Assembly: GCF_002113885.1 (NCBI RefSeq)
Contig: NW_018406720.1
Location: 860,722 to 924,721 of the forward strand
Direction: 5' to 3'
Origin: Mizuhopecten yessoensis
Lineage: Eukaryota
Length of the DNA stretch: 64,000 nt
Below the pieces are notes generated by a model. It ran no database searches. It saw nothing but the letters and a program-made list of their open reading frames with translations, and was not told where the DNA came from. This document shows, piece by piece, positions 35,738 to 57,981 of this stretch. The first letter of the stretch is position 1. Every line of letters begins with the position of its first letter. A program made the translations under genes and the position numbers.

Positions 35738-37866
35738 CTAGAAACACTTCCTGTGAACAATTCCTGGTCCACATTCATCATATTCCTGTTTTGAGATCCA
35801 CATCTGTTGGAATGTAGATAGAGATCCCAGGATAGATCCACCAATCCACACGGAATACTTTCTTTCCGGAGGTGCGATCACCTTAACTTTCATGTTGCTT
35901 GGTACGATTCCATCCAGTTCTTTCTTAAACCGGTCAGCCATACCTGAACCACAGGAAAGACATATTATCTTACTGACAAGATATAACTAAATATGCAGTG
36001 AAGTTGAATTAAGTTTCTGAAAAATTGAACATTGCAGCTTCTTTCTCTTATCAAATAAATAGTCTTTGTTGTAAAATACATTGAGGTCAATAAAGTGTCA
36101 CATACTGAACCCATCAAATATAATACCTTAAGTACATCCTTCACTTCCTAATGAATAAGGATAGAAGTAGGAACGAAATGAATTCATCGTTAATTTTTTT
36201 TTCTTGTTAATAGCAATGTACATATTGTCACATACCTGGAAACATAGTACTTCCGCCAGACATGACGACATTGCTGTAGAGATCCCGTCGGATGTCAATA
36301 TCACAAGCCATGACTGAGTTGTGCAGTAGCTCGTGGACTCCATTAGATTCCATTCCTGACAAAAAAAGATGGATAGGTAATGGCTGTTTGTTTAATCGAT
36401 GAATTCAAAATCAAAGGGCCTTACACTCGCTTAAATAATTCATATTAAAAATAACAATGAAAACCAAATAGTTGCTTACCTATAAACCCTGGTTGGAAAA
36501 GAACTTCCGGACACCGAAATCGTTCGTTGCCAATGGTGACAATTCCACCATCCGGTAGTTCATACGACTTCTCTACTGTAGAAGACGTTGATGCTGACGT
36601 CATTTCACTCTCAAAGTCGAGAGCCACGTAGGACATCTTCTCCTTCATATCACGGACAATCTCCATTTCAGCTGCAATGGAAAATCATTTCCGTAAAATC
36701 GAATCCTTAAATGAAGGCCCGATAGTGTTTTGATAACGGAAGACAATTTCTTTTGCTTGAATATGTCAATAATTGAAAATATTAATTATTAATTAAATTC
36801 TGACTTACAAGAAGTTTTGAAGTTGTAACCTCTCTCGCGTAGGATCCTTTGGAGGTATGCTGTAAGGTCACGGCCTGCCAGGTCCACGCGTTTGATGGCG
36901 TGAGGGAGGGCGTAGCCCTCGTAGATAGGTACCACGTGTGACACGCCATCTCCGGCATCAAACACGATCCCCGTGGTCCGTCCGGAGGCGTACAGAGACA
37001 GCACAGCCTGTATCGCCACGTAGAAGGCGGGCGTGTTAAATGTCTCGAACATAATCTACAAAAGATATGATTGAGAGCAATATAAAAGATGGATTTCCTG
37101 TCTTTGATGGAAATATGACTTCTGTCAGATACATACATCATTCCGTTTCGTTTTGTTTTTCATTTTCGTTTTTGGTAAAAAATATATTTCTATTTATTCA
37201 AATATGTACCTGTATCATTTTTTCTCTGTTGGCCTTAGGATTTAGTGGCGCCTCTGTCAACATGACCGGATGTTCTTCGGGAGCCACACGGAGCTCGTTG
37301 TAGAAAGTGTGGTGCCAGATCTTCTCCATGTCGTCCCAGTTTGTGACGATGCCGTGTTCCACCGGATACTTTAGAGACAGAATTCCACGTTTGTTCTGAG
37401 CCTCGTCTCCGACATAACAGTCTTTTCCACCCATACCAGCCATGACCAACTGTTGAGGAAACAATATTTGTATTTGTTAAACATATAATTAAAGAAAAAT
37501 CGTACATGGCACATGAAGGGAGTGTACATTAAAATATCAACACACATTTCCTTAAAACTGATATTTTGTCTGATGTAGATCTAGAAACAATATTGCACTT
37601 TATTGCTGTGTAATGAAGAGGAACTTTGGAAGAGGCCGAAATATTTGCAAACAAATTATACTGGATATTTAACTCTGCGGTTTGTTATAACATGTTATTT
37701 TGTATATAATGGTAGATTTTAGTTAACCACTCACATCATAACGAGGTCGTCCTGTAATGGCGGGGAAAACTGCACGTGGCGCATCATCTCCGGCAAATCC
37801 CGCCTTACACATTCCACTTCCGTTGTCAATGACAACAGCGGCGATCTCTTCTTCATATGTAGACAT
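35738..37866 (-). CDS. ACT: Divergent actin A1 (378 aa)
   Basis: Exons 37866-37735, 37449-37210, 37055-36809, 36671-36480, 36355-36236, 35943-35738 (132+240+247+192+120+206 = 1137 nt). Motifs [23 protein letters not shown]. Non-coding exon donor at 38319. Confidence 0.96.
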
Positions 37867-38481
37867 ACTCTCTGGTATTGTAGTATTCCAAATGTTCTTT
37901 ATTATCCTTAAATAAAGAAATGAACATATTAGTTCGGCGAATGATCTAAAATATTATATCACGTCTGACAGTAAAATTTGAGCAAAGATTGTATGATTAA
38001 AGCTGATGGACAAGTATCTACAATTTGAACCTGTTTTTTTTGAGAAAAAACATATGCTTTATTGAATGGTTTACGTTAAATGCAAAAAATAGAGGAAAAT
38101 CCTCACCCCCGGAACTCAATACCGACAAGGAAAACAAAACAGTCGAAACAGTTCTCTTCGTCATTGTTACCAAAAAGAAGTTGTATTGTTATAACAAAGT
38201 TCTGTAATATTAATAAAAGAAAGCTTTCGTGATGGCTTAATCGATATTGTATATGGATTTTTGAACATACTTCGATAATAGACTGGTAATAACGTTGAAA
38301 ACATACATCAGTTCTTACCCTGCTTTTTCTTTATATCAACTTTTCTCTTCGTTTGCTTTCTAGTAATGTTGCTATAACTGTTGTTTAAATCTTGTCGCTC
38401 TGACCTCTCTGGAATAGGAGTTTTTTGTGTGTCCTGTCGGATCTGTGGCTGATTCTGAGTCCCCATGGTCTCATAGCGTAC

Positions 38482-38770
38482 TATATAGTAGTGTATCGTT
38501 ACTTCTGAGAAATCTAACGAACTTTAATCTAGTTCGGTGAATATTCCATATAAGGTAGATAAACAATTAGTAATACTGTTGAATAATCTATATGTAGATA
38601 TTACCATCGACTTATGAAACATAAACAGTATATGACTCACCTGACTAACACACTACGGCCGACAGTCTAAAAATAGACATTATACACGATTGGGTGTATT
38701 CCGACGACAGGTAAGCACAGGTGAGTCAATGGAACGGTCTATTTATAAAACTTCTGTTTCGGTCTATAAG
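38482..38770 (-). promoter_or_regulatory. A1 promoter: TATA, STAT-like, CArG, AP-1/E-box, MEF2
   Basis: tatata 38482; TTCTGAGAA 38503; CCATATAAGG 38546-38555; TGACTCA+CACCTG ~38633; CTAAAAATAG 38667-38676; CAGGTGAGTCA ~38718. Confidence 0.7.
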
Positions 38771-55004: not shown

Positions 55005-55743
55005 GTACGCTGTGAGACCATCGGGATTCAGAATCGACCACAGATCCGACAAGAGAGACACAGAAGTACACCTCCTAATTTATAGACGATTGAGCAACAT
55101 GTTTTAAACAACAGGGATAGCAACCTTTCTAGAAGACACACAGTGAGAAGCTGAGACTAAGAAAGGTAAGAATTGTTGTAGTTATTTTTATCTTCAAACA
55201 TATTGTGGGTGTTTTCTGTAATATAATAATCAACACGTACTAAGGGATTTTCAAAATTCTATTCATCTATTCAAATTTTAAAATGTATATTTTGCTTCTC
55301 GTTTCCCAATGTTGATGGTAACTGTAATAAGCTTAACAAGGACAATTACTAACCACATGCTACATATTTATTTTATTCAAACAGAAAACATTCATGATAT
55401 TTTCCTTTTTATCTGTTATTTCCTTCATTCCTGTTGTTTCGTTTTTTACGTTAATATGGTATGGGTTCCGAATGTGTTGTTTTTCCTTGTCGTTATTCAG
55501 GATTGAATGTGTTGCTTAATTTTCTCTTTCACGTAAAAACGTAAATATATAAACAATTTCTATTTTAAAACAAATAAACTAGTTTGTCGAATTGTAAATC
55601 CTCGTCGATAAGATTAATTCATTAGATAGTCGAACCTTTTCTGGCACGTGATATAATATTGTAAATCTTACGGAAAACTAATGTTAGTTTCATCTATTGT
55701 AGGATAACAGAAAAAAGTCTGGAATAATAAGATACCAGGAATT

Positions 55744-57981
55744 ATGTGTACATTTGAAGAAGATGTCGCCGCTGTTGTCATTGACAACGGAAGTGGAATG
55801 TGTAAGGCGGGTTTTGCCGGAGATGATGCGCCACGTGCAGTTTTTCCCGCCATTACGGGACGACCACGTTATGATGTGAGTGGAAAACTAGGATATACCT
55901 GTACCGTTATACATTTCATAATAAAAACATACAACAGAAGAATAACGATCATAATTTGCTTGCAAATGTTTCTGACTCAAGCAGATAAATGTTCCTTTTC
56001 ATAACCCAACAATCAAATGCTTTTTTTATTTAAGATTTACATCCTACTGTAAATACGTACACTCTCTAGCTGATACACTGTACGATATTATTTAATTATA
56101 TTGTTTGACAAACACGATTTTCTTTACTTTTACGTTTGAAAAAATCTGATTACTCAATAGGCGGTTATGGTTGGTATGGGCGGCAAAGAATGTTATGTCG
56201 GAGACGAGGCTCAGAACAAACGTGGGATTCTGTCTCTAAAGTATCCAGTGGAACACGGCATCGTCACCAACTGGGACGACATGGAGAAGATCTGGCACCA
56301 CAGCTTCTATAACGAGCTTCGTGTGGCTCCCGAGGAACATCCGGTCATGTTGACCGAGGCGCCAATAAATCCTAAGGCCAACAGAGAAAAAATGATACAG
56401 GTAAATTATTGAAAAATAGAGCAAAAATGATACAGGTAAATAAGTGGAAAAAAAGAAATAGGAAAAAATAGAAATAAATAAACCACAGCGTTAAAATATT
56501 ACAAAACGAAACCAAACGATGGATGCATCTAACAAAAGTCATATTTCCAATAAGGAAATGTTTACATCATATTGTTTTCAATCATTGCATTTTGTCATAT
56601 AACTCTCAATCATTTCTTTTGTAGATCATGTTTGAGACATTTAACACGCCCGCCTTCTACGTGGCGATACAGGCTGTGCTGTCTTTGTACGCCTCCGGAC
56701 GGACCACGGGCATCGTGTTTGATGCCGGGGATGGCGTGTCACACGTTGTACCTATATACGAGGGCTACTCTCTCCCTCACGCCATCAAACGTGTTGACCT
56801 GGCAGGTCGTGACCTCACAGCTTACCTCCAAAGGATCCTCCACGAGAGAGGATACAACTTTACAACCTCATGTAAGTCATTCAAATTATTCTTCATTATT
56901 TTATTTCTTTTACATCATTATTATTATTTATTATGATTAAGGATTTAACGTTATCGAAAATTGAAACATCTTACGAAATAACAAGCAAAACAAATTTCAA
57001 AACAGATTTAAAGCAATTATCATACAAAAGGGTATTTTGTCATTGCAGCTGAAATGGAGATTGTTCGAGATATGAAGGAGACGATGTCTTACGTCGCTCT
57101 CGACTTTGAGAGTGAGATGACGTCAGCATCAACGTCTTCTACAGTAGAGAAATCGTATGAACTACCGGATGGTGGAATTGTCACCATTGGCAACGAAAGG
57201 TTTCGGTGTCCAGAGGTTCTCTTCCAACCAGGGTTAATAGGTAAGCGGCTTTTTTTTATTATGTTTAATATGAATCATTGAAACGAAATCAAGCATTCTT
57301 CGTTGGTTTCAAATTCATCGATTAAACAAACAACTATTACCTGACGATCTTTTGTTGTCAGGAATGGAATCCAGTGGAGTTCACGAACAACTACACAACT
57401 CAGTCATGGCTTTTGGTATCGACATCCGACGAGATCTCTACAGCAATGTCGTCATGTCCGGCGGAAGTACTATGTTTCCAGGTATGTAACAATATTTACA
57501 TTGCTATTAACAACAACAAAATTTAACGATATCTTCATTTCGTTATTAGTTCTTGTATTATTAATATGGAAGTGGAATATCTGGCGACGGTATTGTATTT
57601 GATGGTTCCAGTATGTGACACTACATTAACTTCAAAGTATATAACAACAATGGAAGTTTTGTTATTTGAGAGAAAGCATCTGCAATATTCAATATTTCAA
57701 AAACTTAATTCAACTTCACTGCATATTCAGTTATATCTTATAAGTTAGATAATATTTGTCTTTCCTCTGATTCAGGTATGGCTGACCGGTTTAAGAAAGA
57801 ACTGGATGGAATCGTACCAAACAACATGAAAGTTAAGGTGATCGCACCTCCGGAGAGAAAGTATTCCGTGTGGATCGGTGGATCTATCCTGGGATCTCTA
57901 TCTACATTCCAACAGATGTGGATCTCAAAACAGGAATATGATGAATGTGGACCAGGAATTGTTCACAGGAAATGTTTCTAG
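55744..57981 (+). CDS. ACT: Divergent actin A4 (378 aa; extra substitutions T89S, L110I, K215T, C285F, D286G)
   Basis: Exons 55744-55875, 56161-56400, 56625-56871, 57049-57240, 57362-57481, 57776-57981; open frame. Confidence 0.95.

What the first reader, a model, noticed from the sequence alone, without database searches (positions are those of the whole stretch)
35738..57981. Amplified divergent actins with paired D187A + R206M in the latrunculin pocket: candidate toxin-insensitive actin system
Seen: all four intact genes read GRDLTAYL instead of GRDLTDYL and SSEMEIVR instead of TAEREIVR (in A2, GCT at 42355 and ATG at 42592). Pseudogene A5 also has M206. The ATPase residues D11, S14, K18, H73, Q137, D154, D157 and H161 are kept. 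Known: Y69, D157, R183, T186, R206, E207 and R210 line the latrunculin site. As I recall, an actin isoform from latrunculin-sequestering Chromodoris nudibranchs was reported with changes at these same two positions (D187G, R206T). Inference: either this cluster is a back-up actin resistant to dietary actin-binding macrolides in a filter feeder, or it belongs to an old molluscan actin clade that carries this pair for other reasons. The second case would recast the nudibranch interpretation.
Basis: partly seen in the sequence, partly recalled or inferred. Interest (0 to 1): 0.9.

Follow-up and report, generated by a model that had tools for sequence, protein, structure and literature searches.

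The report
Old salt-bridge-less actin family, scallop
The Yesso scallop carries a tandem cluster of working but unusual actin genes that lack a conserved internal salt bridge (D187-R206). The same loss is shared by an old actin lineage in clams, snails, lamp shells and moss animals, freshwater species included, so it is inherited rather than a scallop-specific answer to dietary toxins.

Summary
The window (Mizuhopecten yessoensis, contig C3393) holds four intact six-exon, 378-residue actin genes, A1 to A4. All read GRDLTAYL (A187) and SSEMEIVR (M206). A fifth broken copy, A5, has M206. The N gap is intergenic.

The cluster continues past the window, with at least eight intact copies over about 84 kb. 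In all of them 187 is A, while 206 is M, Q or L. dN/dS is 0.07-0.15. All catalytic residues and all direct latrunculin-contact residues checked are kept.

D187 and R206 are reported to be salt-bridge partners. A profile search and a maximum-likelihood tree place these genes in a strongly supported clade (bootstrap/SH-aLRT 99/91; 100/98 with sea urchins). The clade spans bivalves, gastropods, a brachiopod and a bryozoan. Within it, 187 and 206 are among the most variable columns, and 54 of 64 members have neither an acid at 187 nor a base at 206. Freshwater mussels are among them, and a bryozoan has the identical A/M pair.

The toxin-resistance reading is not supported, though it is not excluded. 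Expression is suggested only indirectly. The genes are already annotated. Interest is moderate: the result questions the Chromodoris resistance inference.

The parts
35738..37866 (-). A1, an intact divergent actin gene of 6 exons (37866-37735, 37449-37210, 37055-36809, 36671-36480, 36355-36236, 35943-35738) and 378 aa, with A187 and M206
   Evidence: It is identical to residues 52-429 of OWF48762.1.
37867..41278 (.). Head-to-head spacer between A1 and A2. It holds mirrored ~490-base promoter-region repeats, a CArG box at 38546 and MEF2-like sites at 38667 and 40354. The assembly gap 38997-39126 lies inside it.
41279..43518 (+). A2, an intact divergent actin gene of 6 exons (41279-41410, 41696-41935, 42160-42406, 42587-42778, 42899-43018, 43313-43518). 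The A187 codon GCT is at 42355 and the M206 codon ATG at 42592.
50525..52615 (-). A3, an intact divergent actin gene of 6 exons (52615-52484, 52194-51955, 51789-51543, 51405-51214, 51089-50970, 50730-50525). It is a recent duplicate of A1 (dS 0.06).
52616..55743 (.). Head-to-head spacer between A3 and A4, paralogous to the A1-A2 spacer, with a CArG box at 53301 and MEF2-like sites at 53428 and 54807
55744..57981 (+). A4, an intact divergent actin gene of 6 exons (55744-55875, 56161-56400, 56625-56871, 57049-57240, 57362-57481, 57776-57981). It is a recent duplicate of A2 (dS 0.04).
58909..59574 (-). A5, an actin pseudogene fragment holding only exons 1, 4 and part of 5, with stops and a frameshift. 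M206 is present.

Best explanation
The window holds part of a tandem cluster of functional divergent actin genes of the Yesso scallop. The cluster has at least eight intact copies and two pseudogenes over about 84 kb of contig C3393, with one more gene on C1206.

The genes belong to an old paralog lineage, separate from the conventional actins. It is found in bivalves, gastropods, a brachiopod and a bryozoan, with sea-urchin genes as the nearest outside group. It keeps five introns where the scallop's conventional actins keep one.

A hallmark of the lineage is that the D187-R206 salt bridge in subdomain 4 has been given up. Once it was lost, both positions drifted freely (A/M, A/Q, A/L, K/Q, K/M, H/T, S/K, V/L and others). 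The scallop's A187 + M206 is therefore one inherited state of this lineage, fixed in a subclade shared by Mizuhopecten, Pecten and Argopecten, with the same pair also seen in a Ylistrum gene model.

The proteins keep every nucleotide-binding and catalytic residue and evolve under strong purifying selection. They most likely polymerise and serve as a specialised actin isoform family. The D-loop and longitudinal-contact positions (42, 45, 49, 190, 194, 201-202, 284) are also altered, which suggests changed filament properties.

Shown here: gene structure, intactness, purifying selection, clade membership and variability of the two positions. Inferred: that the salt-bridge loss is ancestral and tolerated rather than toxin-driven, that the proteins polymerise, and that they have a specialised role. 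The recent growth of the cluster is by tandem duplication of a head-to-head gene pair.
For: All exons checked hit Pfam Actin above the cut-off.

dN/dS is 0.07-0.15 in all 21 pairs. dS is 0.04-0.06 for A2/A4 and A1/A3, 0.18-0.24 between the two types, and 0.6-0.87 to A6, A9 and A10.

The cluster extends beyond the window, and all copies have A187 with M, Q or L at 206. Nine conventional actin loci of the same genome are D/R; the three whose ORFs were read have a single intron at 41/42.

Relatives are listed. The careful ML tree was built with the two trait columns left out. It gives divergent plus urchin 100/98, the lophotrochozoan divergent clade 99/91, the pectinid cluster 99/98 and the A/M pectinid subclade 99/92. 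There are 24 and 29 parsimony changes at 187 and 206.

By entropy, 206 ranks 5th and 187 ranks 10th of 378 columns. Position 206 ranks 2nd among columns that are invariant in conventional actins. Of 64 clade rows, 54 lack both an acid at 187 and a base at 206.

Freshwater Sinanodonta, Potamilus and Dreissena lack the pair, and the bryozoan Watersipora has A/M. D187-R206 is described as a salt bridge in PMC3095357. The same six-exon layout is seen in another assembly.
Against: There is only indirect support. Fourteen small, probably RNA, contig sets hold 0.29-0.37 of the gene's words, against 0.70-0.73 for DNA sets. Intronless 1.3-1.8 kb contigs of clade members from unnamed species also exist.

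Coupling of the two positions could not be shown statistically, because there are too few independent contrasts (p about 0.5). No biochemical property was tested. The root of the tree is not inferred, so 'ancestral loss' rests on distribution alone. A few clade members keep D/R or E/R (Potamilus P0367, Gigantopelta). Scallops do accumulate the actin-binding pectenotoxins (PMC5836757), so a toxin link cannot be dismissed on ecology alone.
Confidence: 0.75

Rival explanations
1. The cluster is a toxin-insensitive back-up actin. D187A + R206M would reshape the latrunculin pocket so that the scallop keeps a working cytoskeleton while it accumulates dietary actin-binding macrolides (pectenotoxins, latrunculin-like compounds). 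The amplification would reflect that demand.
For: R206 and T186 lie in the latrunculin-binding region. The D187-R206 salt bridge is said to matter for latrunculin B binding, and a D187A spruce isoform was proposed to bind it differently (PMC3095357). A review lists divergent actins with such substitutions, including those of Chromodoris, as candidate resistance isoforms (PMC12444908). Pectenotoxin-2, isolated from scallops, sequesters G-actin (PMC5836757). The genes are amplified and under purifying selection.
Against: The residues reported to contact latrunculin directly (Y69, T186, R210), together with D157, E214, R183 and D184, are all unchanged. The loss of the pair is clade-wide and old. 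It occurs in freshwater unionids and Dreissena, limpets, a brachiopod and a bryozoan, in many different residue combinations, which looks like relaxed constraint rather than a tuned pocket. From memory (Allingham et al. 2007, not readable here), pectenotoxin-2 binds between subdomains 1 and 3, far from 187/206. No induction or binding data exist.
Confidence: 0.15
2. The copies are decaying or non-functional duplicates, or uncollapsed haplotypes, and the odd residues reflect loss of constraint on the whole gene.
For: Two pseudogenes sit in the cluster: A5 and A8. A1/A3 and A2/A4 are about 94-95% identical at DNA level over whole units. The assembly is fragmented, with 82,659 contigs.
Against: Eight copies have intact reading frames, canonical splice sites and all catalytic residues. 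dN/dS is 0.07-0.15 even for pairs with dS up to 0.87. Orthologous A/M genes are kept in Pecten, Argopecten and Ylistrum. A divergence of 5-6% between units placed in tandem on one scaffold is too high for ordinary alleles. Several other pectinid annotations also show tandem A/M copies.
Confidence: 0.04
3. The clade is a cell-type-specific actin, for example for sperm acrosomal rods, larval muscle or adult muscle. The salt-bridge loss would tune nucleotide-cleft and filament dynamics for that role. This refines the best explanation rather than contradicting it.
For: The spacers carry a CArG box (CCATATAAGG) and MEF2-type sites (CTAAAAATAG), conserved in both duplicated units and mirrored for both genes. 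D-loop and longitudinal-contact positions are remodelled clade-wide.
Against: CArG boxes also drive cytoplasmic actin genes. There are no tissue data. Motif counts are small: 2 of the window's 5 CArG boxes, and 10 of 41 MEF2-like sites in 10% of the window.
Confidence: 0.3

Closest known systems
Conventional metazoan actins (Pfam PF00022), e.g. the scallop's own muscle and cytoplasmic actins on C3363, C5595 and other contigs
   Same: The fold family is the same. Length is 378 aa against 376. All nucleotide-binding and catalytic residues are kept, as are the C-terminal IVHRKCF and the intron at 41/42.
   Different: Identity per exon is only 62-88%. There are four extra introns (121/122, 204, 267/268, 307/308). 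No D187-R206 pair. GRPRYD replaces GRPRHQG, the D-loop is altered, and the C-terminus reads ECGPG. They form a separate clade with 100/98 support.
The Chromodoris nudibranch 'novel actin isoform'
   Same: Both are a second, divergent molluscan actin with both salt-bridge partners replaced. A T at 206 is also seen in clade members of Patella (A/T, M/T), Mactra (A/T) and Mya (H/T).
   Different: The residues differ (G/T against A/M). The nudibranch case was read as an adaptation to sequestered latrunculin A, whereas here the state is inherited and shared with taxa that have no known exposure.
Norway spruce actin isoform Pa3 (D187A), Schwarzerova et al. 2010, PMC3095357
   Same: It has the identical D187A change, which breaks the D187-R206 salt bridge, with T186 and R210 kept.
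   Different: It is a plant isoform of independent origin. R206 is kept there. Altered latrunculin B binding was only hypothesised.
Actin variants linked to latrunculin resistance in the literature (Chlamydomonas NAP1 with a changed Tyr69/71; beta-actin R183A/D184A), per PMC12444908
   Same: They are divergent or mutant actins with changes around the nucleotide cleft.
   Different: Those change residues that contact the drug or its immediate partners. In the scallop genes those very residues are unchanged, and no resistance has been measured.

Membership tests
Actin proper (PF00022, not an Arp) | Significant match to the Actin profile along the whole protein | tested here: met
   Exons 1, 3, 4, 5 and 6 of A2 each hit PF00022 above the 27-bit cut-off, at 38-97 bits. 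Exon 2 was not sent.
Actin proper (PF00022, not an Arp) | Nucleotide-binding and catalytic residues D11, S14, K18, H73, Q137, D154, D157, H161 | tested here: met
   All are kept in A1-A4, A6, A9 and A10.
Actin proper (PF00022, not an Arp) | Ability to polymerise into filaments | not testable with these tools
   This needs recombinant protein. Only purifying selection (dN/dS 0.07-0.15) speaks for function.
Lophotrochozoan divergent-actin clade (defined here) | Groups with the divergent actins of other molluscs, Lingula and Watersipora, apart from conventional actins | tested here: met
   The clade of 61 rows has support 99/91, and 100/98 with sea urchins. Trait columns were excluded.
Lophotrochozoan divergent-actin clade (defined here) | Shared signature motifs (GRP[RK]Y[DEQ], [23 protein letters not shown]) and the six-exon layout | tested here: met
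   The motifs are seen. The same exon breaks are seen in another assembly, L001. Intron positions were not checked in most other taxa.
Latrunculin-resistant actins | Change at a residue that contacts latrunculin directly (Y69, D157, T186, R210, E214) or at R183/D184 | tested here: not met
   All are unchanged in A1-A4. Only A7, outside the window, has R210Q.
Latrunculin-resistant actins | Measured insensitivity to the drug | not testable with these tools
Chromodoris-type isoform | Both D187 and R206 replaced | tested here: met
   A187 and M206 in A1-A4.
Chromodoris-type isoform | Orthology with the Chromodoris isoform | not testable with these tools
   Hertzer et al. 2023 is not held. The symposium passage lies beyond the held text. 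No nudibranch sequence appeared among the listed hits.

The most novel reading that the evidence does not exclude
The whole lineage, not just the scallop copies, may be intrinsically less sensitive to latrunculin-type cleft binders because it lacks the D187-R206 salt bridge. In that case lophotrochozoans would have carried a drug-tolerant second actin system since before the mollusc-brachiopod-bryozoan split. The Chromodoris 'resistance isoform' would simply be the nudibranch ortholog, co-opted rather than newly evolved.
Probability: 0.2. Interest if true: 0.7.

Novelty: new member of a known kind. Interest (0 to 1): 0.4.

Why it matters
The genes themselves are ordinary in the sense that they are already annotated as actins (OWF48762.1, XP_021356942/43/46 and others). 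What the analysis adds is context. Replacement of both salt-bridge partners D187 and R206 was taken in Chromodoris as a sign of latrunculin resistance. Here it is a shared, old and freely varying feature of a whole divergent actin lineage, present in marine and freshwater molluscs, a brachiopod and a bryozoan.

This weakens any inference of toxin adaptation from these two residues alone. It also gives a clear test: place the Chromodoris isoform on this tree, then measure latrunculin binding of clade members from exposed and unexposed species. The analysis also flags a well-defined, unstudied actin paralog family with altered D-loop and longitudinal contacts. That family could be useful for work on actin isoform biology.

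Tried and rejected

2. An exact look-up of A1 (P0355:52-429) and of P0443 in public assemblies found nothing, because records of this genome are left out.

3. The representative library at 50% identity is too coarse for actins. It gave one useful fragment, P0005.

4. The first two searches of the 90% library were swamped by long tandem or chimeric models. A 270-column clade profile fixed that.

5. An alignment of 21 exon rows was misaligned by MAFFT and discarded.

6. Hertzer et al. 2023 and Allingham et al. 2007 are not held. The D187G/R206T passage in PMC7024214 lies beyond the held text.

7. A test of coupled change between 187 and 206 had too few independent contrasts.

8. The pseudogene and relaxed-constraint reading was rejected on dN/dS.

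9. A search for prior descriptions of this clade found none in the held library. That does not show that none exist.
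Full report
**What is in the window**

A motif scan and local alignments and the sequence itself show four intact actin genes arranged as two head-to-head pairs:
- A1 (-) 35738-37866
- A2 (+) 41279-43518
- A3 (-) 50525-52615
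- A4 (+) 55744-57981

Each has six exons with GT..AG introns and 1137 coding bases (378 residues). A broken fifth copy, A5 (58909-59574, -), lies just past the finding's end. It has a stop in exon 1, a frameshift in exon 4, a stop in exon 5, and no exons 2, 3 or 6.

All four intact genes read GRDLTAYL and SSEMEIVR. A5 reads AEMEIIRD.

So are Y69, R183, D184, T186, E207, R210 and E214. Exons 1 and 3-6 of A2 each match Pfam Actin above the cut-off.

**The assembly gap**

The N run 38997-39126 lies in the 3.4-kb spacer between the 5' ends of A1 and A2 and touches no exon. Its two flanks align, in the same order and orientation, to the paralogous A3-A4 spacer. Position 38996 matches 53713 and 39127 matches 53815, an interval of 101 bases. 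The sequence on the two sides is therefore continuous, and the gap is irrelevant to reading frames. I did not fill it or infer its letters.

**Organism and annotation**

The window is G000:C3393:860722-924721 of a 988-Mb assembly. Several NCBI proteins named Mizuhopecten yessoensis sit on a contig of 1,574,229 bases, which is the length of C3393. Residues 52-429 of OWF48762.1 are identical to my A1 model. The first 291 residues of XP_021356946.1 are identical to my A6 model. So this is the Yesso scallop and the genes are already annotated as actins.

**The cluster is larger than the window**

A search of the whole genome with exon 3 and fetched flanks show more copies on the same contig. Coordinates below continue the window's numbering.

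| Copy | Coordinates | Strand | State |
|---|---|---|---|
| A6 | 75704-78576 | + | intact, A187/Q206 |
| A7 | 88153-91165 | + | intact, A187/M206 plus R210Q |
| A8 | 92581-94913 | - | pseudogene |
| A9 | 98838-101434 | - | intact, A187/L206 |
| A10 | 116628-119510 | - | intact, A187/L206 |

There is also an intact gene on C1206 (OWF53830.1, A187/L206) with broken fragments beside it.

In this genome, then, 187 is always A in the divergent genes, while 206 is M, Q or L. The scallop's conventional actin loci are all D187/R206 (L010-L018). The three whose ORFs were read have a single intron at codon 41/42. The divergent genes have four further introns.

**Selection and age of the duplicates**

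Nei-Gojobori estimates give dN/dS of 0.07-0.15 for all 21 pairs. The estimates leave out exon 2 and cover A1-A4, A6, A9 and A10; A7 was not included. dS values are:
- 0.04 for A2/A4 and 0.06 for A1/A3
- 0.18-0.24 between the A1 type and the A2 type
- 0.6-0.87 to A6, A9 and A10

The genes are therefore under strong purifying selection. The A1-A2 / A3-A4 arrangement is a recent tandem duplication of a whole 14.6-kb head-to-head unit, about 94-95% identical.

**Relatives elsewhere**

Searches used exon references, database proteins, or alignments of these.

- Exon 3 against the 50% representatives gave one informative fragment, P0005. It lies on a 1.2-Mb contig of another assembly and has GRDLTAYL, Q206 and the same six-exon layout.
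- Two searches of the 90%-clustered collection were dominated by long models. They still revealed pectinid, oyster, clam, abalone and bryozoan relatives with neither D187 nor R206.
- A 270-column profile of nine such relatives then returned normal-length members.

States at 187/206 in these members:

| Group | Taxon: states |
|---|---|
| Pectinids | A/M, A/Q, A/L |
| Other marine bivalves | Pinctada A/L; oysters K/Q, K/H; Mercenaria K/M, N/M; Ruditapes K/M; Mactra K/L, A/T; Mya H/T, H/M; Mytilus A/A, A/R; Solemya K/A |
| Freshwater bivalves | Dreissena E/K, H/Q; unionids Sinanodonta and Potamilus V/L, V/Q, I/L, D/Q, D/R |
| Gastropods | Lottia H/S; Patella A/T, M/T; Haliotis S/K (with D184H); Batillaria S/Q; Littorina A/L; the sacoglossan Plakobranchus Q/M; Gigantopelta E/R |
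| Other phyla | brachiopod Lingula H/L; bryozoan Watersipora A/M; sea urchins H/R |

**Phylogeny**

I built a maximum-likelihood tree of 79 rows by 377 columns (LG+C20+F+G4, ultrafast bootstrap / SH-aLRT). The two trait columns were removed and exon 2 of the window's genes was masked. Support values:
- all divergent actins plus the urchin genes, against conventional and outgroup actins: 100/98
- the 61 lophotrochozoan divergent rows: 99/91
- the pectinid cluster genes: 99/98
- the A/M subclade (A1-A4, A7, Pecten, Argopecten): 99/92

On this tree 187 changes at least 24 times and 206 at least 29 times.

Within the clade, 206 ranks 5th and 187 ranks 10th of 378 columns by entropy. Position 206 ranks 2nd among the 258 columns that are invariant in the conventional rows. 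Of the 64 clade rows, 54 have neither an acid at 187 nor a base at 206. A formal test of coupled change had too few independent contrasts.

**Why the two positions go together**

Schwarzerova et al. 2010 (PMC3095357), citing the actin-latrunculin structure of Morton et al. 2000, state three things. D187 and R206 form a salt bridge in the latrunculin-binding region (T186 to R210). T186 and R210 contact the drug directly. A spruce isoform with D187A cannot form the bridge.

Paired loss is therefore what one expects once either partner is lost. The many residue combinations seen in the clade look like released constraint, not a tuned pocket. This last step is inference.

**The toxin reading**

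In favour:
- The review PMC12444908 lists divergent actins, including those of Chromodoris, as candidate latrunculin-tolerant isoforms.
- Pectenotoxin-2 from scallops sequesters G-actin (PMC5836757).

Against:
- The direct contact residues are unchanged.
- The feature is old and is shared with freshwater and non-sponge-feeding taxa.
- From my own memory of Allingham et al. 2007 (not readable here), pectenotoxin-2 binds between subdomains 1 and 3, away from 187/206.

Whether the whole clade binds latrunculin less well remains open.

**Expression**

Exon 2 was left out of the later Pfam, structure-sequence, dN/dS and tree steps. One exception is disclosed here: a sandbox-only tblastn reused the locally joined A2 protein, which includes residues encoded there. 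Nothing left the sandbox.

The indirect evidence is as follows:
- Fourteen small contig sets from six studies, guessed to be RNA, hold 0.29-0.37 of the gene's sampled words. My own estimate is that exonic 31-mers can reach at most about 0.43. DNA sets hold 0.70-0.73.
- Clade members from unnamed species occur as uninterrupted 376-378-codon ORFs on 1.3-1.8-kb contigs, that is, as spliced transcripts.
- The spacers carry a CArG box and MEF2-type sites, conserved between the duplicated units and mirrored towards both genes. These are typical of actin promoters.

**Verdict**

The most likely explanation (about 0.75) is that these are functional members of an old divergent actin lineage that long ago gave up the D187-R206 salt bridge and was recently amplified by tandem duplication in scallops. 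The toxin-resistant back-up reading gets about 0.15.

The genes are annotated and the kind (divergent actin isoforms with changes in the latrunculin region) is known, so this is a new member of a known kind. The useful new point is that these two residues cannot by themselves be taken as evidence of toxin adaptation in molluscs, Chromodoris included.

Noticed in passing
proteins P0151-P0165, P0171, P0176-P0177, P0186, P0329-P0337, P0335: Many NCBI mollusc 'actins' of 534-539 aa are built as residues 1-291 of one actin followed by residues 134-378 of another, with the same junction (..DID-TAFYV..) in many species. The scallop example XP_021356946.1 begins with the first 291 residues of A6 and continues with sequence matching A7, a separate gene 10 kb away. 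They look like systematic gene-model chimeras of tandem neighbours.
   Followed up: partly
window 38304-38795 and 40261-40731; 53046-53535 and 54696-55180: Each head-to-head spacer contains a ~490-base inverted repeat, so both genes of a pair have mirrored upstream regions. These hold a CArG box (38546, 53301), MEF2-type sites (38667/40354, 53428/54807) and TATA-like sites.
   Followed up: partly
continuation of C3393, window-style coordinates 88153-91165 (A7): A7 is intact but much more diverged, with a terminal branch of 0.3. It has R210Q at a direct latrunculin-contact residue, PQDRIYS instead of PPERKYS, and a three-residue deletion in exon 4.
   Followed up: no
window 46948-48652 (+): There are long overlapping ORFs in all three frames made of a degenerate tandem repeat (units like ..SVYHRGDSIVSISQG..). 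It lies between the two actin units and is probably a satellite or minisatellite rather than a gene.
   Followed up: no
clade alignment, mature positions 42, 45, 49, 190, 194, 201-202, 284: Besides 187/206, the clade differs from conventional actins at D-loop positions and at positions I recall as lying in longitudinal filament contacts. These columns are invariant in the conventional rows but variable, or fixed differently, in the clade.
   Followed up: partly
L021 (G000:C3363:604261-604503) and L024-L031: The genome also holds more distant actin-like loci. One example is a 63%-identical copy in the conventional actin cluster that reads ISGIDITDYL. There are also Arp-like genes.
   Followed up: no
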